From Heptranchias perlo (lineage: Eukaryota): a DNA stretch of 64,000 nt. Position numbers and translations under genes: made by a program. The notes beneath the pieces are model-generated. The model was not told where the DNA came from, made no database searches, and saw only the letters and a list, made by a program, of their open reading frames with translations. The first letter of the stretch is position 1. Every line of letters begins with the position of its first letter. Where the stretch lies: assembly GCF_035084215.1 (NCBI RefSeq), contig NC_090335.1, positions 47,678,001 through 47,742,000 of the forward strand. The letters run 5' to 3'. This document shows, piece after piece, positions 15,611 to 62,167 of this stretch.

Positions 15611-15719
15611 CGGTCTCTCCCTGATCCTCCAGTCCCAGTCTCTCTCTCTTCTCCCCAACTCTCAAGCCCCCCTGAGACTGCCCATTTCAGCCCCTCTCAT
15701 TCAGTGACCTCAGAACCAC

Positions 15720-18850: not shown

Positions 18851-18941
18851 ATTTGGACCAACTCACTCCAATTGAGGCATCTTTCACATTACAGAGGGAA
18901 ACATGTAATAGATGACAGCAACAGGCCGTGTGCAATTGTAA

Positions 18942-19065
18942 ATAAAAACAGACAAAAATGGAAACACTCAGCAGGTCAGACAACACCTGTGGAGAGAGAA
19001 ACAAAGTTAACGTTTCAGGTCGATGACCTTTCATCAGAAATAGGTCGATGACCTTACATCAGAAA
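18942..19065 (-). mobile_element. Short Penelope-type terminal fragment with minimal hammerhead ribozyme core
   Basis: Minus strand 19037-19009 reads CTGATGA-A-AGGTC-ATC-GACCT-GAAACGTT. Flanked by tgcaattgtaa (18931-18941) and tgcaattttaa (19066-19076). Confidence 0.75.
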
Positions 19066-19301
19066 TGCAATTTTAATCTTTGTTCTGAGATTTACCTGGG
19101 TCTGTACCCTGGCACACTGGATTTAATTTAAATGAATGGAAGGAAAATCAGGCGGGTTCCCTTACAGGCATATACTCCAATCTGCTTAGTTTTTCTATAT
19201 TTGCTATGTCCAGGAGATCCAGTGCACCAGGGTGCAGACCCAGGAAAATTGCCCCAAAAATTTCAAAATCCGAGCGCAATGCACAGTGGCCACAGTGGCC
19301 A

Positions 19302-21216
19302 GATCAACCCTGGTTCAATGAGGAGTGTAGAAGAGCATGCCAGAAGCAGCACCAGGCGTACCTAAAAATGAGGTGCCACCGAGTGAAGCTACAACTCAGG
19401 ACTACATGTACGCTAAACAGCGGAAGCAACATGCTATAGACAGAGCTAAGCGATTCCACAACTAACGGATCAGATCAAAGCTCTGCAGTCCTGCCACATC
19501 TAGTCGTGAATGGTGGTGGACAATTAAACAACTAACGGGAGGAGGAGACTCTGTAAACATCCCCATCCTCAATGATGGCAGAGTCCAGCACGTGAGCGCA
19601 AAAGACAAGGCTGAAGTGTTTGCAACCATCTTCAGCCAGAAGTACCGCTCCACATGATATCAAGAAATGGCTGAGTGCACTGGATACAGCAAAGGCTATG
19701 GGCCCCGACAACATCCCAGCTGTGGTGCTGAAGACTTGTGCTCCAGAACTAGCCGCACCTCCAGCCAAACGGTTCCAGTACAGCTACAACACTGGCATCT
19801 ACCCAACAATGTGGAAAATTGCCCAGGTATGTCCTGTCCACAAAAAGCAGGACAAATCCAATCCGGCCAATTACCGCCCCATCAGTCTACTCTCAATCAT
19901 CAGCAAAGTGATGGAAGGTGTCGTCGACAGTGCTATCAAGCGGCACTTACTCACCAATAACCTGCTCACCGATGCTCAGTTTGGGTTCCGCCAGGACCAC
20001 TCGGCTCCAGACCTCATTACAGCCTTGGTCCAAACATGCACAAAAGAGCTGAATTCCAGAAGTGAGGTGAGAGTGACTGCCCTTGACATCAAGGCAGCAT
20101 TTGACTGAGTGTGGCACCAAGGAGCCCTAGTAAAATTGAAGTCAATGGGAATCAAGGGGAAAACTCTCCAGTGGCAGGAGTCATACCTAGCACAAAGGAA
20201 GATGGTAGTGGTTGTTGGAAGCCAATCATCTCAGCCCCAGGACATTGCTGCAGGAGTTCCTCAGGGCAGTGTTCTAGGCCCAACCATCTTCAGCTGCTTC
20301 ATCAATGACCTTCCCTCCATCATAAGGTCAGAAATGGGGATGCTCGCTGATGATTGCACAGTGTTCAGTTCCATTCGCAACCCCTCAGATAATGAAGCCG
20401 TCTGTGTCCGCATGCAGCAAGACCTGGACAACATCCAGGCTTGGGCTGATATGTGGCAAGTAACATTCGCGCCAGACAAGTGCCAGGCAATGACCATCTC
20501 CAACAAGAGAGAGTCTAACCACCTCCCCTTGATATTCAACGGCATTACCATGGCCGAATCCCCCACCATCAACATCCTGGGGGTCACCATTGACCAGAAA
20601 CTTAACTGGACCAGCCATATAAATACTGTGGCTACAAGAGCAGGTCAGAGGCTGGGTATTCTGCGGCGAGTAACTCACCTCCTGACTCCCCAAAGCCTTT
20701 CCACCATCAACAAGGCACAAATCAGGAGTGTGATGGAATACTCTTCACTTGCCTGGATGAGTGCAGCTCCAACAACACTCAAGAAGCTCGACACCATCCA
20801 GGACAAAGCAGCCCGCTTGATTGGCACCCCATCCACCACCCTAAACACTCACTCCCTTCACCACCGGCGCACTGTGGCTGCAGTGTGTACCATCCACAGG
20901 ATGCGCCTCCCAAACCTGCGACCTCTACCACCTAGAAGGACAAGGGCAGCAGGCACATGGGAACAACAACACCACCTGCACGTTCCCTTCCAAGTCACAC
21001 ACCATTCCGACTTGGAAATATGTCACCGTTCCTTCATCGTCGCTGAGTCAAAATCCTGGAACTCCCTTCCTAACAGCACTGTGGGAGAACCTTCACCACA
21101 CGGACTGCAGTGGTTCAAGAAGGCGGCTCACCACCACCTTCTCAAGGGCAATTAGGGATGGGCAATAAATGCTGGCCTCGCCAGCAACGCCCACATCCCA
21201 TGAAAGAATTTAAAAA
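19302..21216 (+). mobile_element. CR1/L2-group LINE family A, 5'-truncated, RT pseudogene
   Basis: KAMGPDNIP, NYRPISLLS, QFGFR, ALDIKAAFD*, GVPQGSVLGP, LADDC. In-frame stop at 20106-20108 and internal deletions relative to the 28.2 kb copy. A-rich tail. Confidence 0.92.
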
Positions 21217-26170: not shown

Positions 26171-27529
26171 TCCTCTTCAAGGCTTTGTGCTGTAAATATC
26201 CTAGTGGATAATTTATGGCAGATGACAGAAATGCAACTAATGGAGGTTCCATTTTAATAGTCACCTCTTCTCATTATAACGTCAAATATTTTGCAGATTA
26301 AAAGCCACAATGTAAGATCAAGGGCATAAGTTTCCAAGACCCTGTGCTGGTGCACTGTCCATAGAAAACAATGGATGGAAAACTGTGGGCAGTGCACTTG
26401 TGATTTTTTTTGACAAGCCATCCACTGAGTGTGCAGGGTCTTGGAAAACTTTCCCCTCAATATCAACTATTATTTGTATCTTTGTAATAAAATCTCTAGG
26501 CATCGACAAGCAACAGGAGTGCAACTACAACTGACACAACTTCGTCACTCTTTGTTTTAACTTTAGTTGTTAAATGTACTCGTCAAGCAGTATGGGGACC
26601 TGAATCAATCAGTGACACTTTAAAATCAGATCAAATGCTGAGCCTCAGCTGTATTAAGACTGTTGTGACGATAATCTCATCCCAGCCTTGGATCAGCAGA
26701 ACAATTGAGAAAAAAGCTATAGTTGAAATCAAGTCCAAGCGTGCCCACCCAGGGAAGTCAATTTAAGTCTGATTGAAGCAAAATTGGATTTAACTCTATA
26801 AAGTTGACCATTTGCATTCAGTATTTATTGCCTCCATATCCAGGATGTCTCTGTGCGTATAATATTTATCTTGAGGGCTTGTTTCAAGAAGAGAAAGTTC
26901 AGATCTAAATGTAACCAAAAATATATCTGGCACTAAGGTACAATATTGTTTATGACTGTCTGAATGGTGTTATTAATGCCAGAAAGCTTTATTTACAATC
27001 TACTACTCAAATAAGGATATACTTTTCCGCCATTTTCTCCTTTATATGTTTTTATCAGTGCCTAGTCACTACGAACATTTCAGACTTCTCCGTGACTTCA
27101 ACCAATAAGAGGGGCATCTGACCGATGCAAATGAATGAAGTATAATTTCTTCCCCTACTGCCACTTCCTTTCCTAATCTTAACTGTCACGCCAGCCAATC
27201 TGCTCTTTCAGCAAGCAATTCCTGTTTCAGCAGCCTCCTCCGCACAATAGGGTAATGAGTTGTCTCATTCTGACCTGATCACAAACAATTCTTTCAGGTT
27301 TTGTAAACTCTGCATCTACAAGCAGGGTTGTCTAACCACAAACACAAGAAGCACAATTTTTAACATGCTGACAGGAAGAGTCCGGGGTTAGGGGGTAATT
27401 GACAGGCTGACTGCCGACAGGAGCTGTACATCCTTCAGGGGAAAGGGGGGAGAAAGAGAGAGAGAGAGAGAGATCATCGGCAGTCAGGATAGAGATGGAG
27501 GGGGCGGGGGGTACAAAGATTAAAGTGGA

Positions 27530-28200
27530 GACATTGGACATTGGGATCAGAGAGCAGACATTGGACATCGGGTTCAGAGGGCAGACATCGGACATCAGGA
27601 TCAGAGGGCAGACATCAGACATCGGGATCAGAGGGCAGACATCAGACACTGGATCAGAGGGCAGACATCGGACATCGGGATCAGAGGGCAGACATCAGAC
27701 ACGGGATCAGAGGGCAGATATCGGACATCAGGATCAGAGGGCAGACATCAGACACGGGATCAGAGGGCAGATATCGGACATCGGGATCAGAGGGCAGACA
27801 TTGAATATCGGGATCAGAGGGCAGACATCAGACACTGGATCAGAGGGCAGACATCGGACATCGGGATCAGAGGGCAGACATCAGACACGGAATCAGAGGG
27901 CAGATATCGGACATCAGGATCAGAGGCAGACATCAGACATCGGGATCAGAAAGCAGACATCAGACATCAGGATCAGAGAGCAGACATTGGATATCGGGAT
28001 CAGAGAGCAGACATTGGATATCGGGATCAGAGAGCAGACATTGGACATCGGGGTCAGAGGGCAGACATCGGATTTCGGGATCAGAGAGCAGACATCGGAC
28101 ATCGGGGTCAGAGGGCAGACATCAGATATCAGGATCAGAGAGCAGACATCGGACATCGGGGTCAGAGGGCAGACATCGAACACGGGATCAGAGGGCAGAC
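27530..28200. repeat. Minisatellite F, left part; 27 bp unit GGGATCAGAGGGCAGACATCGGACATC with shorter variants
   Basis: Direct tandem repeats up to the LINE junction at 28200. Confidence 0.95.
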
Positions 28201-30438
28201 CACCGCACAGTCCTCGTGGAGATGAAGTCCCGTCTTCGCACTGAGGACACCATCCAACGTGTTGTGTGGCACTACCACCGTGCTAAATGGGATAGATTCA
28301 GAATGGATCTAGCAGCTCAAAACTGGGCATCCATGAGGCGCTGTGGGCCATCAGCAGCAGCAGGATTGTATTCCAGCACAATCTGTAACCTCATGGCCCG
28401 GCATATCCCTCACTCTACCATTACCAACAAGCCAGGGGATCAACCCTGGTTCAATGAGGAGTGTAGAAGAGCATGCCAGGAGCAGCACCAGGCGTACCTA
28501 AAAATGAGGTGCCAACCTGGTGAAGCTACAACTCAGGACTACATGCATGCTAAACAGCGGAAGCAACATGCTATAGACAGAGCTAAGCGATTCCACAACC
28601 AACGGATCAGATCAAAGCTCTGCAGTCCTGCCACATCCAGTCGTGAACGGTGGTGGACAATTAAACAACTAACGGGAGGAGGAGGCTCTGCAAACATCCC
28701 CATTCTCAATGATGGCGGAGTCCAGCACGTGAGTGCAAAAGACAAGGCTGAAGCGTTTGCAACCATCTTCAGCCAGAAGTGCCGAGTGGATGATCCATCT
28801 CAGCCTCCTCCCGATAGCCCCACCATCACGGAAGCCAGTCTTCGGCCAATTCGATTCACTCCACGTGATATCAAGAAACGGCTGAGTGCACTGGATACAG
28901 CAAAGGCTATGGGCCCCGACAACATCCCAGCTATAGTGCTGAAGGCTTGTGCTCCAGAACTAGCTGCGCCTCTAGCCAAGCTGTTCCAGTACAGCTACAA
29001 CACTGGCATCTACCAGACAATGTGGAAAATTGCCCAGGTATGTCCTGTCCACAAAAAGCAGGACAAATCCAATCCAGCCAATTACCGCCCCATCAGTCTA
29101 CTCTCAATCATCAGCAAAGTGATGGAAGGTGTCGTCGACAGTGCTATCAAGCGGCACTTACTCACCAATAACCTGCTCACCGATGCTCAGTTTGGGATCC
29201 GCCAGGACCACTCGGCTCCAGACCTCATTACAGCCTTGGTTCAAACATGGACAAAAGAGCTGAATTCCAGAGGTGAGGTGAGAGTGACTGCCCTTGACAT
29301 CAAGGCAGCATTTGACCGAGTGTGGCACCAAGGAGCCCTAGTAAAATTGAAGTCAATGGGAATCAGGGGGAAAACTCTCCAGTGGCTGGAGTCATACCTA
29401 GCACAAAGGAAGATGGTAGTGGTTGTTGGAGGCCAATCATCTCAGCCCCAGGGCATTGCTGCAGGAGTTCCTCAGGGCAGTGTCCTAGGCCCAACCATCT
29501 TCAGCTGCTTCATCAATGACCTTCCCTCCATCATAAGGTCAGAAATGGGGATGTTCGCTGATGACTGCACAGTGTTCAGTTCCATTCGCAACCCCTCAGA
29601 TAATGAAGCCGTCTGTGCCCGCATGCAGCAAGACCTGGACAACATCCAGGCTTGGGCTCATAAGTGGCAAGTAACATTCGCGCCAGATAAGTGCCAGGCA
29701 ATGACCATCTCCAACAAGAGAGAGTCTAACCACCTCCCCTTCACACTCAACGGCATTACCATCACCGAATCCCCCACCATCAACATCCTGGGGGTCACCA
29801 TTGATCAGAAACTTAACTGGACCAGCCATATAAATACTGTGGCTACGAGAGCAGGTCAGAGGCTGGGTATTCTGCGGCGAGTGACTCACCTCCTGACTCC
29901 CCAAAGCCTTTCCACCATCTACAAGGCACAAGTCAGGAGTGTGATGGAATACTCTCCACTTGCCTGGATGAGTGCAGCTCCAACAACACTCAAGAAGCTC
30001 GACACCATCCAAGATAAAGCAGCCCGCTTGATTGGCACCCCATCCACCACCCTAAACATCCTGTGGCTGCAGTGTGCACCATCCACAGGATGCACTGCAG
30101 CAACTCGCCAAGGCTTCTTCAACAGCACCTCCCAAACCCGCGACCTCTACCACCTAGAAGGACAAGAGCAGCAGGCGCATGGGAACAACACCACCTGCAC
30201 GTTCCCCTCCAAGTCACACACCATCCCGACTTGGAAATATATCGCCGTTCCTTCATTGTCGCTGGGTCAAAATCCTGGAACTCCCTTCCTAACAGCACTG
30301 TGGGAGAACCATCACCACACGGACTGCAGTGGTTCAAGAAGGCGGCTCACCACCACCTTCTCGAGGGCAATTAGGGATGGGCAATAAATGCTGGCCTCGC
30401 CAGCGACCCCCACATCCCGTGAACGAATAAAAAAAAAA
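28201..30438 (+). mobile_element. LINE family A, young 5'-truncated copy with long RT ORF, inserted in minisatellite F
   Basis: ORF 28216-30387 with complete RT motifs (ALDIKAAFDRVWH, GVPQGSVLGP, MFADDC). A deletion of about 22 nt near 30058 shifts the frame. A-tail at 30429-30438. Confidence 0.95.
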
Positions 30439-32030
30439 GACATCGGACATCAGGATCAGAGAGCAGACATTGGATATCCGGATCAGAGAGCAGACATCGG
30501 ACATCGGGGTCAGAGGGCAGACATCGGACATCGGGGACAGAGGGCAGACATCGAACACGGGATCAGAGGGCAGACATCGGACATCGGGATCAGAGAGCAG
30601 ACATCAGACATCAGGATCAGAGAGCAGACATTGGATATCGGGATCAGAGAGCAGATATCGGACATCGGGGTCAGAGAGCAGACATCAGACATCGGGGTCA
30701 GAGGGCAGACATCGGACATCGGGGTCAGAGGGCAGACATCGAACACGGGATCAGAGAGCAGACATCAGACATCAGGATCAGAGAGCAGACATTGGATATC
30801 GGGATCAGAGAGCAGACATCGGACATCGGGGTCAGAGGGCAGACATCGGACATCGGGGACAGAGGGCAGACATCGGACACGGGATCAGAGAGCAGACATC
30901 GGACATCGGGGTCAGAGGGCAGACATCGGACATCGGGATCAGAGAGCAGACATCAGACATCGGGGTCAGACGGCAGACATCGAACACGGGATCAGAGAGC
31001 AGACATCGGGATCAGAGGGCAGACATCGAACACGGGATCAGAGAGCAGATATCGGACATCGGGATCAGAGAGCGGATATTGGACATCAGGATCAGAGAGC
31101 AGATATCGGACATCAGGATCAGAGGCAGACATCGAACATCGGGATCAGAGGCAGACATCGAACATTGGGATCAGAGGGCAGATATCGGACATCAGGATCA
31201 GAGGCAGACATCGAACATCAGGATCAGAGGCAGACATCGAACATCGGGATCAGAGAGCAGATATTGGACATCAGGATCAGAGAGCAGATATCGGACATCA
31301 GGATCAGAGGCAGACATCGAACATCGGGATCAGAGAGCAGATATTGGACATCAGGATCAGAGAGCAGATATCGGACATCAGGATCAGAGGCAGACATCGA
31401 ACATCGGGATCAGAGGCAGACATCGAACATTGGGATCAGAGGGCAGATATCGGACATCAGGATCAGAGAGCAGATATCGGACATCAGGATCAGAGAGCGG
31501 ATATTGGACATCAGGATCAGAGGCAGACATCGAACATCGAGATCAGAGAGCAGATATCGGACATTGGGATCAGAGAGCAGATATCGGACATCGGGATCAG
31601 AGGGCAGACATTGGACATCGGGATCAGAGGGCAGACATCGGACATCGGGATCAGTGAGCAGATATCGGACATCGGGATCAGAGGGCAGACATCGGACATC
31701 GGGATCAGAGGGCAGACATCGGACATCGGGGTCAGAGGGCAGACATCGGACATCGGGATCAGAGGGCAGATATCGGACATCAGGATCAGAGGGCAGACAT
31801 CGGACACGGGATCAGAGGGCAGACATTGGATATCGGGATCAGAGGGCAGACATCAGACACGGGATCAGAGTGCAGACATCGGACACGGGATCAGAGGGCA
31901 GATATCGGACATCGGGGTCAGAGGGCAGATATCGGACATCGGGGTCAGAGGGCAGATATCGGACATCGGGGTCAGAGGGCAGATATCGGACATCGGGGTC
32001 AGAGGGCAGACATCAGACATCGGGATCAGA
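30439..32030. repeat. Minisatellite F, right part
   Basis: The same unit resumes directly after the LINE A-tail. Confidence 0.95.
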
Positions 32031-32946
32031 GTGGGGGGGGGATCCAGGCAACATCGTTTTTAAGGTATGTTTATTTAATTTGTTCACAATGGGAAATATA
32101 ATTTTATTTAATTTATTTAGTTTATTTTTCACTGACCTGGCCCTTTCCGTTTGGTTTCACCAGGCGTGAATGGGAAGCTGTGGGAAAGTGCCCAGGTAAT
32201 GATAAAATCTTTTTAACTATCCAATACACAAAAAATAAACTACCTTAAGTACCTCAATGAGGTACATTTGCTCCTTTAATTATCAGCCTGCTGGATTTAA
32301 GTGGGGGTGGGACTTCCTGGTGACTGCTGTAGGCACACACACAGATTTGCCTGAGTCTCATTCAAAAATGTGCGGGTTCCAGCTGGGATGTCTGCCCACT
32401 CCCAAAAACAGTGATTTTGATTGTCCCCCCACCCCCAACCCACCCGTTTTCCCCTTTTAATATCATGCTCAAGGTGTCCTCCATCTCAGTCTGCACACCT
32501 GATGGTGGTTGAAGTTCCTCTGTGTGCTATTTTTTGCACATCAGTTAATGCATTCATGTCAAATTTCTGTATACACTATTTTAACAGTCATCGGCATGTT
32601 TTCAAATAAACAGGCTTAAAACTTTGTTAACATAGTACACAAATAGCAGTCCCCAGATGTAAGAATCCACTATTTATTCACTTTAGTTTAAGGTAGTGTT
32701 TGTTGGATTTGTTCATGATGCAAATGTTTGGTGACCAGCTGTTAAAATGACCATTGTTTGTAACTGAGTTCCATTAGCCATTTAAGGAGTACATCAGTGT
32801 TTCTGTACTACATTCCAAAATGAAAACTAGATTTTAATTTTTCTTGTTCTTCAGAATAAAATTCAGATTAGTTCTTTCAGAATTTCTTGTCATCACTTAG
32901 AGAAAAAAGGAACTGAAATACCTCATGTATTTATATCTTGATACAG

Positions 32947-37018: not shown

Positions 37019-38490
37019 ATGGGGGGGAGTGCGCAGTAGATGTATTCAGCACTACATCTGAGGAGGAGGCACATCAGCATCTGTAGCAGGCACGGCGTGC
37101 AGTTCTGGGAGTTGCAGCTCCACAAGGCAGAGGTGCACCACAAGAAACTGCAGAAGAGCAGAGGGGGGAAGAATAGAAGGCCCGAGGTCGCAGGAGGCAC
37201 TAGCCTCGTGAGAGGGTCTACAGGCAGAGGCTGAGCTTCCTGGACCTCTCAGAGGAGCAGTGCCTACGAAGGCTCAGATTGAGTCGCCAGGTGGTCGCAG
37301 ACGTCTGTGCGCTCCTTCATGCAGAGCTGCTCCTGGATGGGCCCGATGGCCACGCATTGCCCGTTTCAGTTAAAGTCACCACTGCCCTCAACTTCTTTCC
37401 CTCCGGATCCTTCCAGGGTGCCACCAGTGACATCACCAGGATCTCTCAGTCATCTGCACATAAGTGTATACGACAGGTCACGGATGGCTTGTTTGCCAGG
37501 GTATCCGACTACGTCAACTTCCCCATCAACAACATCAGCCAGACTGAGAGGGCAGTGGGTTTCCACTCTCTGGCTGGCTTCCCAAGGGCACAGGGTGCAA
37601 TTGATTGCACACACGTAGCAATCCGAGGACCTCCACATGAGCCAGGACTGTTCATCAACCGAAAAGGATATCATTCCACCAATGCGCAGCTGGTTGCGAC
37701 CACCGGAAGAGGTTTCTGCAGGTTTGTGCCAAATTCCCGGGCAGCTGCCGTGATTCCTTCATTCTGCATGAATCCAACATCCCGGCCCTCTTCCACACAC
37801 AAAACAGACTTAAGGGCTGGCTCCTTGGAGACAAGGGATATTCCCTGCAGACATGGCTCATGACACTTGTGAGGAACCCCTCCAACAAGGCACAGCTGTG
37901 GTACAACGAGTCACATCACCACCAGGTCTGTCATTGAACAAGCCATAGGAATGCTGAAGATGCGCTTCAGGTGCCTGGATCGATCTGGGGGAATCCTTCA
38001 GTATTCACCGGCAAGGATGTGTAGAATAATAATCTGCAGGGAGTATCCCTTGTCTTCAAGGAGCCAGCCCTTAAGTCTGTTTTGTGCGTGGAAGAGGGCC
38101 GGGATGTTGGATTCACGCAGAATGAAGGAATCGTGGCAGCTGTCAGGGAATTTGGCGCACACCTGCAGAAACCTCTTCCGGTGGTCGCAAACCAGCTGTG
38201 CATTTATGAAGTGATATCCCTTTCAGTTGATGAACAGATTGCTACGTGTGTGCAATAATCGTGTGTTGCGTCCTGCACAACATCGCTCAACAGAGAGGGT
38301 TACAGGTGGATGAGGTCCCATGCGCTCGTGAAGCAGCTGCACCTGCCATCAACATTGAAGAAGACGAGGAGCAGGAGGAGGAGGAGGAGGGGGTCGGTGG
38401 ACGATGGGTGAACCATCGGCAGAGCAACATCTCGCCTGGCTGCTCGTGATGCCAGGAAGTCACTCATATTTGATAGATTCTCACAGGGAG
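37019..38490 (+). pseudogene. Harbinger (HARBI1-like) DDE transposase pseudogene
   Basis: GSFQ, AGFP..GAIDCTH (D1), NRKGYHS.N.QLV, GWLLGDKGY (D2), TRSVIEQAIGMLKMRFRCLD (E), CCVLHNIA and an acidic tail. Frameshifts and an inverted insertion at 38033-38256. Confidence 0.9.
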
Positions 38491-44575: not shown

Positions 44576-46642
44576 AAGAACATAAGAAATAGGAGCAGGA
44601 GTAGGCCAATCGGCCCCTCGGGCCTGCTCCGCCATTCAATACGATAATGGCTGATCTGATCCTAACCTCAAATCTAAAGAACACAAGAAGTAGGAGCAGG
44701 ACCCGGCCACTCAGCCCCTGGGCCCGCTCTGCCACCCACAGAGCCTTGTCCGATCCGAACTCAGCTTCATGTCCAATTTCCTGCCCGCTCCCCTTAACCC
44801 CTAATTCCCTTTACTTCTAGGAAACTGTCATTTTCTGTTTTAAATTTATTTAATGATGTAGCTTCCACAGCTTCCTGGGGCAGCAAATTCCACAGACCTA
44901 CTACCCTCTGAGTGAAGAAGTTTCTCCTCATCTCAGTTTTGAAAGAGCAGCCCCTTATTCTAAGATTATGCCCCCTAGTTCTAGTTTCACCCATCCTTGG
45001 GAACATCCTTACCGCATCCACCCGATCAAGCCCCTTCACAATCTTATATGTTTCAATAAGATCGCCTCTCATTCTTCTGAACTCCAATGAGTAGAGTCCC
45101 AATCTACTCAACCTCTCCTCATTTCTCCGCCCCCTCATCCCCAGAATTAGCCAAGTGAACCTTCTTTGTACTGCCTCGAGATCAAGTATGTCTTTTCTTA
45201 AGTATGGACACCAAAACTGTATGCAGTATTCCAGGTGCGGTCTCACCAATACCTTATATGACTGCAGCAATACCTCCCTGCTTTTATATTCTATCCCCCT
45301 AGCAATAAAAGCCAACATTCCGTTGGCCTTCTTGATCACCTGCTGCACCTGCATACTAACTTTTTGATTTTCTTGCACTAGGACCCCCAGATCCCTTTGT
45401 ACTGCAGTACTTTCCAGTTTCTCGCCTTTAAGATAATAACTTGCTCTCTGATTTTTCCTGCCAAAGTGCATAACCTCACATTTTTCAATATTGTATTGCA
45501 TCTGCCAAATCTCGGCCCACTCACCCAGCCTATCTATATTCCCTTGTAGGTTTTCTATGTCCTCCTCACTCTTTACTTTCCCTCCCATCTTTGTATCATC
45601 TGCAAACTTTGATATGTTACACTCGGTCCCCTCCTCCAAATCGTTAATATAGATTGTAAAGAGTTGGGGACCCAGCACCGACCCCTGCGGAACACCACTG
45701 GCTACTGGTTGCCAGTCCGAGAATGAACCATTTATCCCAACTCTCTGCTTCCTGTTAGATAAGCAATCCTCCACCCATGCCAGAATATTACCCCCAATCC
45801 AGTGATTCTTTATCTTGAGCAATAATCTTTTATGTGGCACCTTGTCGAATGCCTTCTGGAAGTCCAAATACACTACGTCCACTGGTTCCCCTTTATCCAC
45901 CCTTTACGTTATGTCCTCAAAGAACTCAAGCAAATTTGTCAGACATGATTTCCCCTTCATAAAGCCATGCTGACTTTGTCCTATTAAATTATGTTTATCT
46001 AAATGTTCCGTTACTGTCTCCTTAATAATAGACTCCAAAAGTTTACCCACCACAGATGTTAGGCTAACTGGTCCATAATTTTCAGCCTCCTGCCTACTAC
46101 CCTTTTTAAATAAGGGTGTTACATTAGCAGTTTTCCAATCTGCCGGGACCTTTGCCGAGTCCAGAGAATTTTGGAAAATTATTACCAAAGCATCCACAAT
46201 CCCTACTGCCACTTCCCTCAAGACCCTAGGATGTAAGCCATCAGGTCCAGGGGATTTATCCACCTTGAGTCCCATTAATTTACTGAGTATCAATTCCTTA
46301 GTGATTTTAATCGTATTTAGCTCCTCCCCACCTAGAGCCCCCTGTTTGTCCAGTGTTGGGATATTCTCAGTGTCCTCAACCGTAAAGACTGAAACAAAAT
46401 ATTTGTTCAGCATTTTTGCCATCTCCATGTTTCCCACCATTAATTTCCCGGTCTCATCCTCTAAGGAACCTACGTTTGCCTTAGCCACCCTTTTTCTTTT
46501 TATATAACTGTAGAAACTCTTGCTATCTGTTTTTATATTTTTTGCTAATTTATTTTCATAATCTATCTTCCCTTTCTTAATCAATCCTTTAGTTACTTTT
46601 TGCTGTCTTTTGAAGACTTCCCAATCTTCTATCCTCCCACTA
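44576..46642 (-). mobile_element. Young CR1 LINE, 5'-truncated, near-intact RT
   Basis: ORFs 46665-45904 and 45900-44794 are in one frame, separated by a single TAA. KSPGPDGLHP, VYLDFQKAFDKVPH, GVPQGSVLGP, SKFADDTK, LRRMRGDLIE-like C-terminus; tail aagaacataagaa on +. Confidence 0.95.
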
Positions 46643-48279
46643 AGTTTACAGTGTCTCGGCTGCATATGATTTCTTTCTATTCACGCAGTGTCCTTTCTTA
46701 CCTACATTTTCAATTTTTCACCTCCTTTGTGGTGCCTATTCATTCTGTAGACTCTATACCTTGGTTTTTAATTTCCAAGTTAATGTCCTGGTTTAACTAG
46801 AGATCTATTATTCTTATCTCATTGCACGTTACCAATAATAGATGTTTCATATTTTACAAACTTGTTCTGCATATTTCTAGCAATACTATGCATTAGTTTA
46901 TCTATTTTGTCCTTTATTACCATGTAATTTTCCCTCGTGGTCTATGCATCCCACCCTCTTAATGTACTATCCCCTCATGCAATGAATGCGGGTAATACTG
47001 GTGATGCTGCGTGATTCAAAGGAAGGAGGGGATATTGCAGACACAACCTGCCGGGAAACAATAAAGCTGCATTACCACCAACTAGATTACTTGGCTCTTG
47101 GGACAGAAAGAAAGTGTAATGTCATATTGGTTTCTATGGGAAATGGGTTTCAGCAGTCTGAAACCAGCTCCAAATGGAAATGATTCTGCAGCACAAAGCT
47201 TGTTTTGAATTCAGGCTGACCCACTGAAGAAGTCAATGAGGATGGCAAAATGGAAATATCATCGTGGTGTAGTAGTTGGTGCTCTTCTGAAGTTAGAGTT
47301 GGGACAGTACAGAAAGAGTGTTACCATGTACCTAATTCATATTATTGCTAAGTTGGGAGTCCTTGATGCTGACACTTGGTGGAAAAATAGGAAACAATTT
47401 ATAGTTTCTCTCATCTTAAATAGCACAAAGTTCACTGAAGGAAAACTGGCGATACTGCCCTTGAACAAATCACGAACTCATGGATGCCAGAAATTGCGAC
47501 ATCTGTCAGTGTTATATAAATGCACTGGGATTGTCCATCTGAGAGAAAAGACCTTCATCCTCTCCCTGTTGGCTGGATATAAATCCAGGCGGTGGAGAGA
47601 AAAGTGCAGCAATTGGACATGGAGATAGAATATATAACAAATACTTAATTTTTTGATAATCAGGGGAAAAATGTTATTCAGTCCATATTGAGCTGAGGTT
47701 ATATGAGATTATGCTTGCAATTTACAATCCTTTTCACTGCCTTTCCGCCTATGTTACGCAGTCTCTACTATACACTAATGATAACTGAGAGTCAAGAATA
47801 AGTTTCTTTTCAGAAATATATCTTTTGAAAAAAGATGCACAGATATTTGATAGTGAATCAATTCTGAGGTTCTGCTGATGTTCACACACCTCTTGATCTA
47901 TATTATGTTATCTAATATGTTTGATTAAATCCAGAGTTTAGGGGGTGACTTTAACCCCCGCCCCCCGCCCCCAGGCAGGTGTGGGAGTAAGATATTAAAA
48001 ATGGGCAACCCGACCCTATACCGCCGTTTGCCTCCAATTTAACTTAATTTTAGTTTTAGTGCCTGCAGGCCGGGTTTCTTGGGCCTCAGGAAACCCGGCA
48101 GCTGAAGGGAGGCGTGAAGGGCCGGATCCAGCAGATAAGTGCCATTACAGCACTGCTTGTGGGCCAGGAGGAGCAGGAGTGCTTGCCCCCAGCCCACTAA
48201 GCTTACCTCCACAAGATTGGCCAACCCCTGCACCCCCACCCCCGCTGCGCGGGATCCCTGTGGTCAGCCGACCCCCCAC

Positions 48280-49400
48280 CGCGATGCCCAACATCCACCT
48301 GCGATGCCTGACATCTCCCCGCAATGCCCGACTCCGCCCACGATACCCGACTCCCCCCGTGATGTCTGACTCCGCCCCGCGACATCCAGCTCGTCACCCC
48401 CGTGATGCCCGACTCCCTCCCACAATGCCCGACCACTCCCCACGATATCCAACTCGTCACCCCCACGACGTCCGACTCCCCCCGCGATGTCCAACATGTT
48501 CCCCCCCCACAACTTCTGACTCGTCACCCCTGCGATGTCCGACGCCCCCCTCCCCCAACGATGTCTGATTCCCTCCCCCCCGTGATGTCCTCCAACTCCT
48601 CCCCCGTGATGTCCTCCAACTCCTCCCCCGTGATGTCCAACTCCTCCCCTGTGATGTCCTCCAACTCCTCCCCCGTGATGTCCAACTCCTCCCCTGTGAT
48701 GTCCAACTCCTCCCCCGTGATGTCCTCCAACTCCTCCCCCGTGATGTCCAACTCCTCCCCCGTGATGTCCAACTCCTCCCCCGTGATGTCCTCCAACTCC
48801 TCCCCCGTGATGTCCTCCAACTCCTCCCCCGCGATGTCCAACTCCTCCCCCGTGATGTCCTCCAACTCCTCCCCCGTGATGTCCAACTCCTCCCCCGTGA
48901 TGTCCAACTCCTCCCCCATGATGTCCAACTCCTCCCCCATGATGTCCAACTCCTCCCCCGTGATGTCCAACTCCTCCCCTGTGATGTCCAACTCCTCCCC
49001 CGTGATGTCCTCCAACTCCTCCCCCGTGATGTCCAACTCCTCCCCCGTGATGTCCAACTCCTCCCCCGTGATGTCCTCCAACTCCTCCCCCGTAATGTCC
49101 TCCAACTCCTCCCCCGTGATGTCCAACTCCTCCCCCGTGATGTCCAACTCCTCCCCCGTGATGTCCAACTCCTCCCCCGTAATGTCCTCCAACTCCTCCC
49201 CCGTGATGTCCAACTCCTCCCCCGTAATGTCCTCCAACTCCTCCCCCGTGATGTCCAACTCCTCCCCCGTAATGTCCTCCAACTCCTCCCCCATGATGTC
49301 CGGCTCCTCCCCCGTGATGTCCAGCTCCTCCCCCGTGATGTCTAACACCCCCCTGCGATATCAGACTGCCCCCCGTGATATCCGACTTCACCCTCCTCCC
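48280..49400. repeat. Minisatellite G, 21/24 bp unit GTGATGTCC(TCC)AACTCCTCCCCC with degenerate flanks
   Basis: Homogeneous core at about 48575-49340; diverged units on both sides. Confidence 0.95.
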
Positions 49401-49759
49401 CCCCGCACTGTCCAACTCCGCCCAACCCCGCAATGCCCTCCGACCTCCCCCCCCCCACAGCCGCAATGTTGGACTCATCTCTGCTCCACTCCCCAGCTGC
49501 CATCCCACCCAACAGCCAGCCAGACCGTCAAACTGGCTGGCTACAGCCAGGAAACCTGTTGAAAAAATTTTAAAGAGGTCCTGTCGTTAAATTCAGCAGG
49601 AGTTGCGGGTAAGCCATACTTCTGGGTACCCTGGCCTCAAATCCTCCCCCACTGCTCCCTTCCCACCTCATGGTTATTATCAGGGCTTATATCTCTCTAC
49701 CAAACATTCATAGCCTCAATGTATTTCTCACAGTAACACTAATTTTTGTTGTTTCACAG

Positions 49760-55239: not shown

Positions 55240-55656
55240 CAAGTCTCCTGCAGCTCACGAAGCCAGTTAGAACCATACAGAAAAGGACCAATGACATCAC
55301 TGAACTTGAATGTAGAATTTTAGCTCAAACACAAAATGATTCTGAGTTCTCAGTCACGTGGCTCTTCAGTAAGATACAGGAACCAAATGTCAAAGGGGAA
55401 AATCTTCTGAACATTGGTCGCAATAATATAGTCCAGTACTATGGAGAATTGCTTACAGATACTCAGAAGAAGATGAAATTCCGGGATGAGAAGACCTCTA
55501 ATGGTGTGTACAAGCTGATTATACAGAAAACTGGTGTGGATGACAGCGGAAGTTACTATTGTCATGTAACAGAGTGGCTTTTGGATCCCAACAGCATCTG
55601 GTACAAAGTGGGAGAGAATACGTCGGCAACAACAACTGTTCAAGTGCATAGAGCAG
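55240..55656 (+). CDS. CD101: CD101/IGSF3-like exon 7, Ig domain 6
   Basis: Acceptor cctgtgtag|, donor GCAG|GTAAAC, 417 nt, open. TELECRILAQTQNDSEFSVTW..DSGSYYCHVTEWLLDPN. Confidence 0.92.
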
Positions 55657-56393
55657 GTAAACAAATTTCCTAAATATCTCATAAAAATTGCAGGACTGGA
55701 GCAAATGGCAATTTGTTTATTTAATACTATGAGCTGTTTCTTTTCCTGCAACAAAGAATGACTTGCCTTGAAGTGCAAATAATATATGGAACTAGCAGTT
55801 GCACAGATACAATGGCCCTTGTGGAGAAAAAGATTGGCAATGATTCTAAAAGAGCAATTTCTCGACTTTGCGCTCCTGACAGGAGCTGCCTGGCAGTGGT
55901 CCATGCAGCACATGTCTTTTAGACCATTCATTTAAATGGCTGGAAAATCATAAGCAATGCACACTGGAATTTCCAATATGGGCTCACAGTAGTCTGAAAG
56001 TTACCCCTTAAGTGTAAGCTAAACAGTCTCCAAAGTGGATGAGCCAAGAAATTAAAATGGAGATAAGAAAGAAAAATTATAGAAAGCCAGTGGACGAAAG
56101 GGAGAGAAGAACTTTGGAAGTAATATAAGAAAATGTTGAAAATGAGTTATAAATGGTTTTATGAGTCCAAAAAGGACATTAGAGCAGAATGTAACAAAGG
56201 AGGCTAAGCACAATAATTCAACTTTTTTTTATTATCAGAATAGGAAAAGAGTGTTTATGGAGGAAGTGATGGGCTGGATTTTCCTTTGCTGCACTGTCCA
56301 AAATCAGGCTATATAGTGATGAAAACTAAAGAAAAATCAGGTGAGGTGGCCTACTGGCCTCACAGCACCAGTCACACTTTCCCTCCCACCCCA

Positions 56394-60170: not shown

Positions 60171-61062
60171 TTGTTTATTGCAGAAACTGCATTGACCTGC
60201 TCAGCAACTTTTCCCCAGACAGCCCTTACTGGAGCTTGCTGAGGAGAGTGCCCCTCAAATCCAGAAATGGGAATTCACCCTTCACATTACCTTCAGGGCT
60301 CTCTCTGGAAAAGGAGCTGCTTTCCCTCTCCTCTACAAATTTGCTGATTCCTGACTCATTTTACAACAAGTATCAGCAAGATCACATGAAATTGGAAAAC
60401 CAGAAGTGCAGGCACAGCTTTAAGTGCTGCTCCCGTACTTTCACTCCTCTGTGCAGAAAATCCCATCATCTGACCTCTCCGTTCCCTGCATGGAACTTCA
60501 AAAAAATAATTACTTGGATGAGATAAAGTGCTATATAAATGGAAGTTCTTTCATCATTATATTATGAAGGACTGCAATATTGAATACGAGCTCAACCTTA
60601 ATATTTAATGATAGACTAAAATGCAGAGCATGTTGTGTATTGTGAATGTTTAATAATGAACTAGAATATAGAATGTGTTATATAACTTGAATATTGAACT
60701 AAAATACAGAATGTATTGTATAAACTGAATACTGAATATTTAATGGTGAACGAGAATACAATATGTGCTGTATAATCAAAATACTTATTTGGGAACTGGA
60801 AACAAAATGTTTCCCCTTTAGGAGGAGGAAGATCTTGATGTATAGCTTGTAACTTCAACACTTAAAAATTGTCAAGTTACCTTCACTTTTATAATAAATT
60901 CTGTATTGCGCACTTCCCCATTGAGTGGCCTATAGTCCTGAAATAACTCAAATTATATTCTGATTGAGTTTTCTGTAGAATCAAAAATCTTGGCATTGTG
61001 CCTCAAACTTAACCAGTCAGAAAAACTTGCTTGAAGATCCAACCTCTACCCCAGATTGTATA

Positions 61063-61252
61063 ATTGTAAACAATTTTACAACACCAAGTTATAGTCCAGC
61101 AATTTTATTTTAAATTCACAAGCTTTCGGAGGCTTCCTCCTTCCTCAGGTAAATGTACCTGAGGAAGGAGGAAGCCTCCGAAAGCTTGTGAATTTAAAAT
61201 AAAATTGCTGGACTATAACTTGGTGTTGTAAAATTGTTTACAATTGTCAAAT
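61063..61252. mobile_element. Perfectly palindromic Penelope-type element with a hammerhead core on each strand and a 12-bp target-site duplication
   Basis: Arms 61062-61151 and 61156-61245 are exact reverse complements around the loop aatg. ccagattgtata occurs at 61051-61062 and 61253-61264. Confidence 0.9.
61156..61192 (+). ncRNA. Minimal hammerhead ribozyme-like motif
   Basis: CTGAGGA (61159-61165), A, stem II GGAGG/AAG/CCTCC, GAAA (61180-61183), palindromic AGCT in place of stem III, predicted cleavage after T61187. Stem I is only tac/gtg. Confidence 0.6.
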
Positions 61253-61333
61253 CCAGATTGTATAGTATATGATTATGTTTACATTGTTTCAAAGAACTTC
61301 ATAATTTCTAACTTTTTTGTCTTTTTTTCCTAG

Positions 61334-61533
61334 TTGCTACTCTTCACTCGAAGGCCTGTGCATCACCGTCCCTCTTCTACTTCATATTTATCTACCCGTT
61401 TATAATCTTTATTGTTCTTATCATTTTTGCTTTGTATTTTCACCGGAGGCCAAAGAAAAAGCAGAAATCTGCTAATGAAAAGAGCCTTTGGACACCGATA
61501 GAACCAATCGTTGGCGATCCTAAAGGTGAATAA
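61334..61533 (+). CDS. CD101: CD101/IGSF3-like exon 8: stalk, transmembrane helix and cytoplasmic tail
   Basis: Acceptor ctttttttcctag|. Translates VATLHSKACASPSLFYFIFIYPFIIFIVLIIFALYFHRRPKKKQKSANEKSLWTPIEPIVGDPKGE*, with TAA at 61531-61533. The C-x4-LFYF..YPF pattern resembles IGSF3/CD101 TM regions. Missing from the ORF track. Confidence 0.92.
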
Positions 61534-62167
61534 GAAGCAAATGTAATATAAGATTTTGTATTTCGATATTTTTGTTGCTATGGGAACTGTGCCTAACTAG
61601 AAATTTGTAAATATGTCTTCACTTACCACAGCTTCTCTCCCGGTTCAAACAGCTCAATTGTTTTTTTAGCTTCTCATCACAGCCAACATTCAATATTTGT
61701 GAACCTTCTTCCTCTTGAATCTTTCAGTTCCTAAATTCAAACCTAATTTTTCACAAATGATTTTATTTTTCAATCCTTCAATCCTTTCCCTATATTGAGA
61801 TCCTTGCAGCCATTGCCGCAGATACAGAGTCAGAGAGTCAAAAATAACAAAATAATCCAGGAGTATTGGATTCTAAAAATCTAAAGGGCTGAGCACTTGG
61901 AGAGTAATATACCGTTATAATAGAATTTGTGCTCTGGGTTGGACTTCACAAAAGTGCTGAACTAAATTGCAATATCAGTAGAGAACAAGTTGGTGGATGT
62001 TATTCTGAAACTATACAGTGCTCTGGTCAGACCACACCATGTATACTGTGGCCAGTTTTGATTACCGGGATACAAGGCAATCATTCAAATCCTTCAGGGG
62101 AAACTATCTTCTGTTAAATGATCTCTAGATATTGCTATTTTTGTCTGGTTTTATATGATTGTAAAAT

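What the first reader, a model, noticed from the sequence alone, without database searches (positions are those of the whole stretch)
61051..61333. Perfect 184-bp palindrome with back-to-back hammerhead ribozyme cores next to the 3' splice site of the transmembrane exon
Seen: two 90-bp arms with no mismatch, a 4-nt loop and an exact 12-bp flanking direct repeat (ccagattgtata), which indicates a recent insertion. Each strand carries CUGAGGA-A-[GGAGG/AAG/CCUCC]-GAAAGCUU. Established: Penelope-like retroelements carry minimal hammerheads in their pseudo-LTRs, with stem III replaced by a palindromic tetranucleotide (here AGCU), proposed to work as dimers, and they often form inverted pLTR pairs. 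Inference: this is a pLTR-only, protein-free unit that presents a ribozyme whichever strand is transcribed. In the pre-mRNA it would form a 90-bp dsRNA ending 88 nt before the last exon. It could mask its own ribozyme, attract ADAR or Dicer, or alter use of the TM exon; read-through of exon 7 ends GKQIS* at 55673 and would give a soluble ectodomain.
Basis: partly seen in the sequence, partly recalled or inferred. Interest (0 to 1): 0.8.

Follow-up and report, generated by a model that had tools for sequence, protein, structure and literature searches.

The report
Young fold-back retroelement insertion with ribozyme
A 190-bp piece of a very abundant jumping gene, folded back on itself and carrying a small self-cutting RNA motif on each strand, landed recently in the last intron of an immunoglobulin-family membrane protein gene; it looks like an ordinary product of this class of element, and the motif is most likely locked inside a hairpin.

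Summary
There are two perfect 90-nt arms (61062-61151, 61156-61245), a loop AATG, an exact 12-bp target-site duplication, and a minimal type-I hammerhead motif on each strand.

It is one copy of a very abundant, young repeat family. In a DNA run of the same organism, 11,029 contigs lay on the 1.8-kb stretch and 8,304 of them fitted both arms. Summed depth was 0.64-2.45 million on the element against about 14 on the flanks. Other copies are head-to-head fold-backs with different arm lengths.

The layout matches what is published for Penelope-like elements (PLEs): severe 5' truncation, an adjacent inverted copy, a short extension at one end only, a TSD, and a minimal hammerhead.

This copy is cut inside helix I of the ribozyme. 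In a transcript the 90-bp hairpin (-162 kcal/mol) leaves helix II unformed (P about 1e-17), so self-cleavage here is unlikely.

RNA contigs from the carrier use the nearby 3' splice site. Editing, small RNAs, TM-less isoforms and the empty site could not be tested. No RT/GIY-YIG link was obtainable.

First readers of this scan flagged many similar elements elsewhere in this genome (unchecked). Verdict: an ordinary new member of a known kind.

The parts
61051..61062 (.). Left copy of the 12-bp target-site duplication CCAGATTGTATA (its last base also begins the left arm)
   Evidence: 12 of 12 identical to 61253-61264. X1 contig record 1 runs 60300-61084 across this junction with 0 differences.
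61062..61151 (-). Left arm: the inverted copy of the element's 3' part, 90 nt. It carries the hammerhead motif on the minus strand (core to cleavage site 61148-61120; predicted cut after the base at 61120 on the minus strand).
61152..61155 (.). Loop / junction filler AATG. Base 61156 (T) and its mirror 61151 (A) are also not family sequence.
   Evidence: In one search table 7, family contigs diverge before 61157 and behind 61150.
61156..61245 (+). Right arm: the direct copy of the element's 3' part, 90 nt
   Evidence: X1 contig record 5 runs 61224-62037 with 0 differences.
61159..61187 (+). Minimal type-I hammerhead motif. Core CUGAGGA, an extra A at 61166, helix II GGAGG/CCUCC with loop AAG, GAAA, palindromic GC, then U16.1 and U17. 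The predicted cut is after 61187. The 3' strand of helix I is 61188-61196.
   Evidence: The 51-nt arm folds as a three-way junction at -10.3 kcal/mol, z = -1.86.
61246..61252 (+). Seven nt, GTCAAAT, present only at the right end (a short one-sided extension; the element's 3' end)
   Evidence: Some family contigs diverge from this copy behind 61250 and continue with other sequence (table 7: 52 contigs in X1, 18 in X5).
61253..61264 (.). Right copy of the 12-bp target-site duplication
61334..61533 (+). Coding part of the last exon: a hydrophobic transmembrane stretch, then a basic HRRPKKKQK stretch, with the stop at 61531-61533. The 3' splice site AG is at 61332-61333.
   Evidence: RNA contigs of organism A (X5 record 24: 3,497 nt, with its position 2480 falling at 61332) and of organism B (records 9 and 26) start matching at 61332.
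55240..55656 (+). Upstream Ig-domain exon ending ...GCAG, followed by GT. Read-through would add GKQIS and a stop at 55671-55673.
   Evidence: read directly. Not tested with RNA.

Best explanation
This is a young insertion of 190 bp plus a 12-bp target-site duplication. [quoted passage not shown]

Only the last 97 nt or so of the element was copied, which is severe 5' truncation. That short copy is joined head-to-head to an inverted copy of itself. This most likely happened within one integration event. Either the reverse transcriptase switched from the RNA onto its own nascent cDNA (snap-back), or both target strands primed cDNA synthesis. The exact mirror symmetry of this copy favours snap-back; this step is inference.

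The hammerhead motif is inherited from the parent element's terminal repeat. In this copy the truncation removed 4 of the 6 nucleotides of the native 5' strand of helix I. Any transcript also contains the motif's perfect antisense, so the RNA folds into a 90-bp hairpin and the ribozyme is not expected to cut.

For the host gene it is most likely a neutral intronic passenger. It lies 88 nt upstream of the last exon, outside the core 3' splice signals, and that splice site is used in the carrier.
For: Shown:
- Perfect arms, loop and 12-bp TSD.
- The motif meets the published min-HHR features: the core, an extra nucleotide between 9 and 10.1, G10.1-C11.1, palindromic 15.2-16.2, and no loop 3. I read the Results and Discussion of PMC4209133. 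The motif is read: 2 sites in the window, 0 in 400 shuffles.
- Family size. In DNA run X1, 11,029 contigs were laid on the 1.8-kb stretch at 80% likeness or more. By likeness (99+/95-99/90-95/<90) they split 4,329/3,780/2,099/821, and 8,304 fitted both arms. Summed depth per bin on the element was 639,702 to 2,452,670, against 12.9-19.1 on the single-copy flanks.
- Other fold-back copies. Of the 15 joints shown out of 83, 12 link the left arm to the right arm at other positions. Two of those 12 are exactly mirror-symmetric and 3 more are within 3 nt.
- Extent of the family (table 7). Loose ends show the family continuing upstream of 61157 (39 contigs in X1, 13 in X5) and downstream of 61250 (52 and 18 contigs). 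So this copy is truncated at its 5' side, and it ends at an internal point of longer copies.
- Masking. Hairpin -161.7 kcal/mol. Helix II pair probabilities in the full transcript are 3e-18 to 4e-17, against about 1.0 for inter-arm pairs.
- Splicing. A spliced RNA contig from the same sample starts matching at 61332 with depth 86.9. Intron contigs have depth 5.3-7.5.

From the literature (passages seen):
- PLE insertions are highly 5'-truncated and often have an inverted 5'-truncated copy adjacent. They carry an extension at one end only and are flanked by short TSDs (PMC8557442; PMC3846280). The latter also proposes self-priming to explain palindromes at inverted junctions.
- The anole PLE protein cleaves and extends both target strands. 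It starts reverse transcription at two internal sites and prefers 5'-ATT-3' targets. Its hammerhead is not needed for insertion in vitro (PMC11167929). The TSD here contains ATT.
Against: - No reverse transcriptase or GIY-YIG ORF is linked to this family by any search. Six ORFs were scanned: 4 hit RVT_1 only, 1 hit DDE_Tnp_4 below Pfam's cutoff, and 1 hit nothing. None hit GIY-YIG, and the nearest lies about 15 kb away. The PLE assignment therefore rests on architecture and motif.
- Rfam's hammerhead models give no match even at E<=10 on a 68-nt arm.
- The isolated arm's fold is thermodynamically unremarkable (z = -1.86; 10 of 200 shuffles fold as well).
- There is no covariation evidence. The family is too uniform, with only one mirror pair of variant positions (61099/61208) listed on the element. 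Fourteen variant rows were not shown.
- The one-sided extension is 7 nt, against the 30-40 nt described for PLE tails.
- 7 of the 12 head-to-head joints shown are asymmetric by 7-61 nt, so snap-back cannot be the only route.
- The centre of the palindrome at this locus is not bridged by any listed contig, and run X1 may be the assembly's own sample.
Confidence: 0.78

Rival explanations
1. A dedicated non-autonomous 'hairpin' element. On this reading the palindromic, protein-free unit is itself the replicating master form, transcribed from either strand and mobilised in trans by a PLE.
For: The family is enormous compared with what a single autonomous element usually yields. 8,304 of 11,029 X1 contigs fit both arms, though any arm-only contig does that. 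Non-autonomous PLE derivatives are described (passage on Chlamys/MRC1 in PMC8557442; abstract of the 2026 bioRxiv preprint 10.64898/2026.07.22.740005). First-reader notes of this scan propose the same (unchecked).
Against: Head-to-head junctions lie at many different positions in other copies (12 joints shown, from 61089 to 61135 on the left arm). The palindromes are therefore made anew at each insertion and are not inherited. A perfect 90-bp hairpin RNA is a poor template, and its 3' end would be paired. Family contigs extend beyond both the inner and the outer end of this copy (table 7), so longer source copies exist.
Confidence: 0.1
2. The insertion has been taken up by the host gene. On this reading the 90-bp intronic dsRNA recruits ADAR or Dicer, or changes use of the transmembrane exon to give a soluble isoform ending GKQIS.
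For: The position, 88 nt upstream of the last exon. A very stable hairpin. The read-through stop exists.
Against: The spliced RNA contig of the carrier uses the 3' splice site, with depth 86.9 against 5.3-7.5 for intron contigs. No A>G difference is listed on the element in the RNA run X5; its single A>G place is 62043, which the DNA run also shows, although contigs drop rare variants. The insertion is young and is one of a very large number of like copies. Organism B splices at the same site, and no contig of its two RNA runs lies on the element or intron, so filled versus empty could not be compared.
Confidence: 0.06
3. A DNA-transposon MITE or fold-back element whose hammerhead-like motif is a chance match.
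For: A perfect inverted repeat flanked by a direct repeat. No Rfam hammerhead match.
Against: A 12-bp TSD and a one-sided 7-nt extension are unusual for cut-and-paste elements (established knowledge). Inner junctions vary between copies, as with 5' truncation. The motif meets all the sequence features of PLE min-HHRs, with 0 of 400 shuffled windows holding such a site. The native family sequence adds a 6-bp helix I (table 7).
Confidence: 0.03
4. An assembly fold-back artefact: the palindrome does not exist in the genome as written.
For: No listed contig bridges the centre. PLE structures are known to trouble assemblies (PMC8557442 passage).
Against: Both flank/arm junctions are each carried by a Logan contig with 0 differences (records 1 and 5). 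An exact 12-bp TSD brackets the two arms, which an artefact would not create. An RNA-run contig (X5 record 18) also reaches the left junction.
Confidence: 0.03

Closest known systems
Minimal hammerhead ribozymes (min-HHR) of Penelope-like element pseudo-LTRs (Cervera & de la Pena 2014, PMC4209133)
   Same: Type-I layout. Core CUGANGA ... GAAA. [quoted passage not shown] A G10.1-C11.1 pair closing helix II. No helix III or loop 3, only a palindromic 15.2-16.2 dinucleotide (GC) between A15.1 and U16.1, so that two copies could form helix III as a dimer. The paper also reports motifs occurring mostly as single, dispersed, truncated copies, and pairs on opposite strands 100-700 bp apart in Schistosoma.
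   Different: Here the two motifs are only 10 nt apart, back to back in a perfect palindrome. Helix II is 5 bp, against 7-8 in the Schistosoma families. The 5' strand of helix I is truncated in this copy. No cleavage data exist, and the published min-HHRs themselves cleave poorly in vitro.
PLE insertion architecture: 5'-truncated copy plus adjacent inverted 5'-truncated copy, one-sided 'tail', short TSD (Arkhipova et al. 2013, PMC3846280; Craig et al. 2021, PMC8557442)
   Same: A head-to-head inverted repeat flanking nothing else. A TSD (8-10 bp in the rotifer examples, 12 bp here). An extension at one end only. A palindrome at the inverted junction, which those authors interpret as self-priming.
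   Different: An extreme miniature: arms of 90 nt with no internal sequence at all. The extension is 7 nt against 30-40 nt. The family is far more abundant than the rotifer families described.
Poseidon element of Anolis carolinensis, PAc (PMC11167929)
   Same: The hammerhead in the RNA template printed in that paper has the same layout, by my eye: CUGAGGA, one extra nucleotide, helix II closed by G...C, GAAA, palindromic CG, then U and C. Reverse transcription starts at internal sites 82-89 nt 3' of the cut site; here the insertion ends 58 and 65 nt 3' of it. The protein cleaves and extends both target strands and prefers ATT targets.
   Different: No sequence alignment was run, because that sequence is neither in the window nor a stored locus and I did not type it. 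A by-eye resemblance of the regions downstream is only a lead. In PAc the ORF starts at helix II; here the arm has no ORF.
Non-LTR retrozymes (tandem type-I hammerhead repeats giving circRNAs; PMC7229834 seen as a listing and abstract only; bioRxiv 10.64898/2026.07.22.740005 seen as abstract and passages)
   Same: Short, protein-free, type-I hammerhead-bearing derivatives proposed to descend from PLE pLTRs. Monomers are dispersed through genomes, including introns.
   Different: Retrozymes are direct tandem repeats, so that two sense ribozymes can dimerise and release a circle. Here the second copy is antisense, so a transcript holds one ribozyme plus its perfect complement.

Membership tests
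Hammerhead ribozyme, PLE-type minimal variant | Conserved core C3-U4-G5-A6-N7-G8-A9 and G12-A13-A14 | tested here: met
   CUGAGGA at 61159-61165 and GAAA at 61180-61183, with the same on the minus strand
Hammerhead ribozyme, PLE-type minimal variant | Helix II closed by G10.1-C11.1, with one unpaired nucleotide between 9 and 10.1 | tested here: met
   A61166, then GGAGG-AAG-CCUCC. Helix II forms in the MFE and centroid folds of the isolated arm.
Hammerhead ribozyme, PLE-type minimal variant | A15.1-U16.1 with palindromic 15.2-16.2, no loop 3, and H17 not G | tested here: met
   GAAA-GC-UU, then G. U17 is at 61187. The feature list comes from PMC4209133.
Hammerhead ribozyme, PLE-type minimal variant | Helix I formed by the sequences flanking the core | tested here: inconclusive
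   The native 5' strand (family contigs end ...CGTTC before 61157, which gives 6 bp with GUGAAU) is cut off in this copy, leaving 2 of 6 nt (table 7). A substitute pairing of 3+5 bp with one mismatch forms with loop and arm sequence.
Hammerhead ribozyme, PLE-type minimal variant | Match to a curated hammerhead covariance model | tested here: not met
   No Rfam hammerhead family matched at gathering score or at E<=10 on 401 nt and on 68 nt. Those models expect a helix III, so a miss is expected; that expectation is my inference.
Hammerhead ribozyme, PLE-type minimal variant | Compensatory changes in helices across family members | not testable with these tools
   Only depth tables of contigs were available. 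The only variant listed on the element is the mirror pair 61099/61208, which lies outside the helices. Fourteen rows were not shown.
Hammerhead ribozyme, PLE-type minimal variant | Site-specific self-cleavage | not testable with these tools
   This needs in vitro transcription. At equilibrium, helix II probability in the palindromic transcript is 3e-18 to 4e-17.
Penelope-like element (PLE) | ORF with a PLE-clade reverse transcriptase and a GIY-YIG endonuclease | tested here: not met
   The 190-bp insert has no ORF. Of six ORFs scanned in the window, 4 hit RVT_1 only and none hit GIY-YIG. Whether longer family copies carry such an ORF could not be tested. This copy can at most be a non-autonomous fragment.
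Penelope-like element (PLE) | 5' truncation with an adjacent inverted 5'-truncated copy (head-to-head) | tested here: met
   The feature comes from PMC8557442 and PMC3846280.
Penelope-like element (PLE) | Short target-site duplication | tested here: met
   12 of 12 nt
Penelope-like element (PLE) | Optional extension ('tail') at one end only, tied to two reverse-transcription start sites | tested here: inconclusive
   There is a 7-nt one-sided extension. Some family contigs run on past 61250 with shared sequence (table 7). The published tails are 30-40 nt.
Penelope-like element (PLE) | Hammerhead motif in the terminal repeat | tested here: met
   See the hammerhead rows above. The position, 58-65 nt from the 3' end of the insertion, is comparable to PAc's 82-89 nt.
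Non-LTR retrozyme | Direct tandem repeats, each with a sense hammerhead | tested here: not met
   The two copies are inverted, and there is no direct repeat of the unit in the window.
microRNA precursors mir-4716 / MIR477 | Score at or above Rfam's gathering threshold | tested here: not met
   62.0 against 76 bits and 48.8 against 65 bits, on both strands alike. This is a generic long-hairpin effect.

The most novel reading that the evidence does not exclude
In this genome a PLE-type family has produced, by a rough depth ratio, tens of thousands of young, TSD-flanked mini fold-backs. The excess of exactly mirror-symmetric junctions would point to a stereotyped snap-back step, in which the reverse transcriptase switches from the RNA to its own nascent cDNA. 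That would make the still unresolved PLE integration mechanism readable from natural junctions.

Two further leads:
- Arm starts cluster 4-7 nt 3' of the predicted cut site (6 of the 15 joints shown have their right side at 61191-61194). This could be a first in vivo trace of template cleavage by a PLE hammerhead.
- The many perfect intronic hairpins could serve as a source of small RNAs against the family.
Probability: 0.2. Interest if true: 0.6.

Novelty: new member of a known kind. Interest (0 to 1): 0.3.

Why it matters
On its own this is one more intronic transposon insertion, with an inherited and probably disabled ribozyme motif. Its value lies in what it samples. The family is young, uniform and extremely abundant, and its insertions are miniature fold-backs with clean TSDs. 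How PLEs generate their inverted and tandem structures is described in the literature as undefined (PMC8557442 passage). A census of such junctions in this genome could discriminate snap-back from two-ended priming, and could ask whether the hammerhead ever cuts the template in vivo. For annotation, such perfect hairpins give sub-threshold microRNA-model matches and could be mistaken for microRNA genes.

Tried and rejected
- Rfam hammerhead models gave no hit at gathering score on the whole window, at E<=10 on 401 nt, or on a single 68-nt arm. The only matches were long-hairpin families below threshold (mir-4716 62 against 76 bits; MIR477 48.8 against 65). I rejected these as a generic hairpin effect.
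- Looking for further copies in the window found none. I tried the exact or 3-mismatch core, gapped patterns, blastn-short of the arm (best other hit 12 nt), and a 17-nt piece of the downstream family consensus (0 matches against 0.20 expected).
- One metagenome scan with the core pattern gave 0 hits. That collection is not expected to hold this organism.
- The search of earlier findings by sequence was blank.
- The Lunse, Weinberg & Breaker paper on dimeric PLE hammerheads is not held. I saw only its citation and a review's summary (PMC6765202 passages).
- A search for 'shark', 'Penelope' and 'ribozyme' listed 2 papers, neither on such elements by title (listing only). So I make no claim about what is in print for cartilaginous fish. 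It is only my recollection, not a call, that repeats of this layout are common there. Organism names were coded and I did not determine the species.
- Naming the host gene went no further than the family. Pfam gives V-set Ig domains for 2 of the 3 exon ORFs tried, and the PDB search gives only generic antibody V domains.
- The MAFFT alignment of this element with the second mini-element at 18931-19076 misaligned the cores. I claim no homology beyond short shared blocks seen by eye.
- The MFE fold of that second element is not a hammerhead, and Rfam gives nothing for it.
Those of PMC4209133 (family alignments, cleavage gels) and PMC11167929 (genomic ends and tails) may bear on how close this motif and its 3' end are to published families.
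- Editing, small RNAs, TM-less isoforms, the empty site and polymorphism were not testable. All four runs laid were contigs, the two organism-B runs covered only exon and UTR, and read laying allows one call.
Full report
**What is there.** The arms 61062-61151 and 61156-61245 are exact reverse complements, 90 nt with no mismatch, and are separated by AATG. The repeat finder extends them to 98 nt at 97%. CCAGATTGTATA occurs at 61051-61062 and again at 61253-61264. The left arm starts directly at the repeat, sharing base 61062. The right arm is followed by seven extra nucleotides, GCTAAAT-like in position but reading GTCAAAT (61246-61252), before the repeat. The insert is therefore 190 bp (61063-61252) with a one-sided 7-nt extension. 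As RNA, the region folds into a single hairpin of -161.7 kcal/mol (z = -30.6; 0 of 200 shuffles fold as well).

**The motif.** Each strand reads CUGAGGA-A-GGAGG-AAG-CCUCC-GAAA-GC-UU, followed by G (61159-61187 on +, 61148-61120 on -). In hammerhead numbering:
- the conserved core is C3-A9;
- one unpaired A follows;
- a 5-bp helix II is closed by G10.1-C11.1;
- G12-A13-A14 follow, then A15.1;
- a palindromic GC occupies 15.2/16.2;
- then come U16.1 and U17, with cleavage predicted after 61187.

The paper that defined the minimal hammerheads of Penelope-like elements reports these as recurrent features that were not imposed by its search descriptor: the extra nucleotide between 9 and 10.1, G10.1-C11.1, and palindromic 15.2-16.2 (PMC4209133, Results and Discussion read). 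A descriptor of my own encoding these features plus a helix I found only these two sites in the window, and none in 400 dinucleotide shuffles of it. The looser pattern gives 2 matches against 0.02 expected. Cut out on its own, a 51-nt arm folds into the expected three-way junction, but not unusually well (-10.3 kcal/mol, z = -1.86; 10 of 200 shuffles fold as well). Rfam's hammerhead models do not match at any threshold tried. I take this as expected for a motif without helix III, but it is a failed test and is listed as such.

**It is one copy of a very large, young family.** No second copy lies in the window. I laid public contigs on 60300-62100 at 80% likeness or more.

| Measure in DNA run X1 (organism A) | Value |
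|---|---|
| Contigs laid | 11,029 |
| By likeness, 99+/95-99/90-95/<90% | 4,329 / 3,780 / 2,099 / 821 |
| Contigs fitting two places of the stretch | 8,304 |
| Summed depth, four element bins | 639,702 to 2,452,670 |
| Summed depth, single-copy flanks | 12.9-19.1 |

- X1 comes from the same sample as the RNA run X5, and may be the assembly's own sample.
- Only the palindrome allows a contig to fit two places of the stretch.
- The tool warns that summed depth is not a copy number. As an order of magnitude the ratio is 45,000-174,000 arm equivalents.
- The only variant listed on the element is the mirror pair 61099 G>A / 61208 C>T, where most of the family depth carries the other letter. Fourteen variant rows were not shown.
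- The two runs of organism B match the exon and UTR at roughly 94% (14 differences in 246 nt, record 9). They have no contig on the element, although they do cover two other repeats of the stretch (60483-60604 and 62008-62068). This fits a family specific to, or only recently expanded in, organism A's lineage. These are small RNA contig sets, however.

**How the family looks, and what that says about this copy.**
- Junctions in other copies. Of the 15 joints shown out of 83, 12 connect a point in the left arm to a point in the right arm. These are head-to-head junctions of other copies with other arm lengths. Two are exactly mirror-symmetric (61098>61209, 61131>61176), three more are within 3 nt, and seven are off by 7-61 nt (note 2). 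Fold-backs are therefore the routine form of this family. The junction is made anew at each insertion, and symmetric junctions seem far more frequent than independent truncation of two arms would give. This rests on a selected sample of 12.
- Upstream extent. Loose ends show family contigs continuing upstream of 61157 with ...CGTTC (39 contigs in X1 and 13 in X5, with the mirror image behind 61150 in 53 contigs). With the retained AC, this gives GUUCAC, which pairs with GUGAAU just 3' of the cut site and forms a canonical 6-bp helix I. That supports the hammerhead reading for the family. It also shows that this copy is truncated inside helix I, keeping 2 of the 6 nucleotides. The junction letters AATGT are filler, not family sequence.
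- Downstream extent. Other contigs diverge behind 61250 and run on with a shared sequence (52 in X1, 18 in X5). The 3' end of this insertion is therefore an internal point of longer copies.

**Comparison with published PLE biology.**
- Structure. PLE insertions are described as highly 5'-truncated and often carry an inverted 5'-truncated copy immediately adjacent. They have an extension present at one end only and are flanked by short TSDs (PMC8557442; PMC3846280). In the latter paper, palindromes at the inverted junction are interpreted as self-priming.
- Biochemistry. The purified anole PLE protein cleaves and extends both strands of the target. It starts reverse transcription at two internal sites of the RNA, and the stretch between them is the 'tail'. 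It prefers 5'-ATT-3' targets and does not need hammerhead cleavage to insert in vitro (PMC11167929).
- Layout of the anole hammerhead. By my eye, the hammerhead in the RNA template printed in that paper has the same layout as the one here. I did not align it, because that sequence is neither in the window nor a stored locus.
- Distances. Its reverse-transcription start sites lie 82-89 nt 3' of its cut site. Here the two arm ends lie 58 and 65 nt 3' of the predicted cut. The TSD here contains ATT.
- What is missing. There is no link to a PLE reverse transcriptase or GIY-YIG ORF. The insert has no ORF. None of the six ORFs I scanned has GIY-YIG (4 hit RVT_1 only), and the nearest lies about 15 kb away. 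First-reader notes of this scan mention PLE ORFs with hammerheads elsewhere in this genome, but these are unchecked and I could not see those sequences.

**Most likely mechanism (inference).**
- One integration event copied only the last 97 nt or so of the template.
- Reverse transcription stopped inside helix I. After a few untemplated nucleotides, synthesis continued on the nascent cDNA itself (snap-back). This automatically gives two arms with the same inner end. The second arm ended 7 nt short of the first.
- The alternative is cDNA primed on both target strands, as the anole enzyme can do. That explains the asymmetric junctions seen in other copies, but it needs a coincidence to explain the exact symmetry here.
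- I put snap-back at about 55% and two-ended priming at about 35% for this copy.

**Will the ribozyme work here?**
- A transcript of either strand contains one sense motif and its perfect antisense, not two sense motifs, so the dimer route is closed within one molecule.
- In the 254-nt context, the helix II pairs have probabilities of 3e-18 to 4e-17, while the competing inter-arm pairs are at about 1.0.
- The antisense arm is transcribed first, so the hairpin can zip up as the motif emerges.
- Together with the truncated helix I, and the weak activity reported for complete min-HHRs, self-cleavage at this locus is unlikely.

**Host gene.**
- The window carries V-set Ig-domain exons (Pfam V-set at 5e-11 and 9.5e-13 for 2 of 3 exon ORFs).
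- The last exon, from 61334, encodes a hydrophobic stretch followed by HRRPKKKQK, with a stop at 61531-61533.
- The upstream exon ends at 55656, and its read-through would add GKQIS-stop.
- In the RNA run of the carrier, a 3,497-nt contig starts matching at 61332 from its own position 2480. It is therefore spliced, and the two extra letters AG equal the last letters of the upstream exon. Its depth is 86.9, against 5.3-7.5 for intron contigs. Organism B's contigs begin at the same place.
- The splice site 88 nt downstream of the insertion is thus in normal use.
- No A>G difference is listed on the element in the RNA run. Family-wide contigs swamp the locus, however, and contigs drop rare variants. 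Editing, small RNAs and a TM-less isoform therefore remain untested.

**Verdict.** This is a new member of a known kind and of modest interest in itself. The scan's first readers flagged many like it in the same genome: 81 notes hold 'hammerhead' and 54 hold 'Penelope', and two lie in or beside this window. The family as a whole is the more interesting object.

Noticed in passing
window 18931-19076 (minus strand): A second short insertion carries a different min-hammerhead-like motif, CUGAUGA-A-AGGUC-AUC-GACCU-GAAA-CG-UU. A 25-nt tandem duplication covers the core half (19017-19041 / 19042-19066, 96%). An imperfect 11-nt flanking repeat (10 of 11) lies at 18931-18941 and 19066-19076. Its MFE fold is not a hammerhead, and Rfam gives nothing. 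It was first flagged by a scan note.
   Followed up: partly
window 61051-61062 and 18931-18941: The flanking repeats of both mini-insertions contain ATTGTA. The anole PLE endonuclease is reported to prefer 5'-ATT-3' (PMC11167929). With only two cases this may be chance.
   Followed up: no
window 61191-61194: 6 of the 15 joints shown by read laying have their right side at 61191-61194, which is 4-7 nt 3' of the predicted hammerhead cut after 61187. This may be an alignment break in the A/T-rich run 61193-61206, or it may mark the 5' ends of cleaved templates (note 2).
   Followed up: no
window 60483-60604 and 62008-62068: Two other repeats show raised summed depth in organism A (3,279 and 4,547 against about 14) and are also present in organism B's runs. 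These are older families shared by both species, unlike the hammerhead family.
   Followed up: no
window about 10000-17600, 27500-32200, 48000-49600: There are long stretches in which ORFs on several frames and both strands give periodic low-complexity translations (for example PPHRLLI..., GGEEGKPWGG..., GIRGQTSDI..., SSPVMSN...). These look like large tandem-repeat arrays. They were not analysed.
   Followed up: no
window 19620-21155, 28216-30387, 44794-46665 (minus), 37279-37863: There are reverse-transcriptase ORFs (RVT_1, E from 8.5e-39 to 2.2e-4) without GIY-YIG, probably LINE fragments. One ORF has a weak, sub-threshold DDE_Tnp_4 match.
   Followed up: partly
window 61115-61192, both strands: The palindrome scores 62 bits against Rfam mir-4716 (gathering score 76) and 48.8 against MIR477 (gathering score 65). 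Perfect TE fold-backs of this family could be mis-annotated as microRNA precursors.
   Followed up: partly
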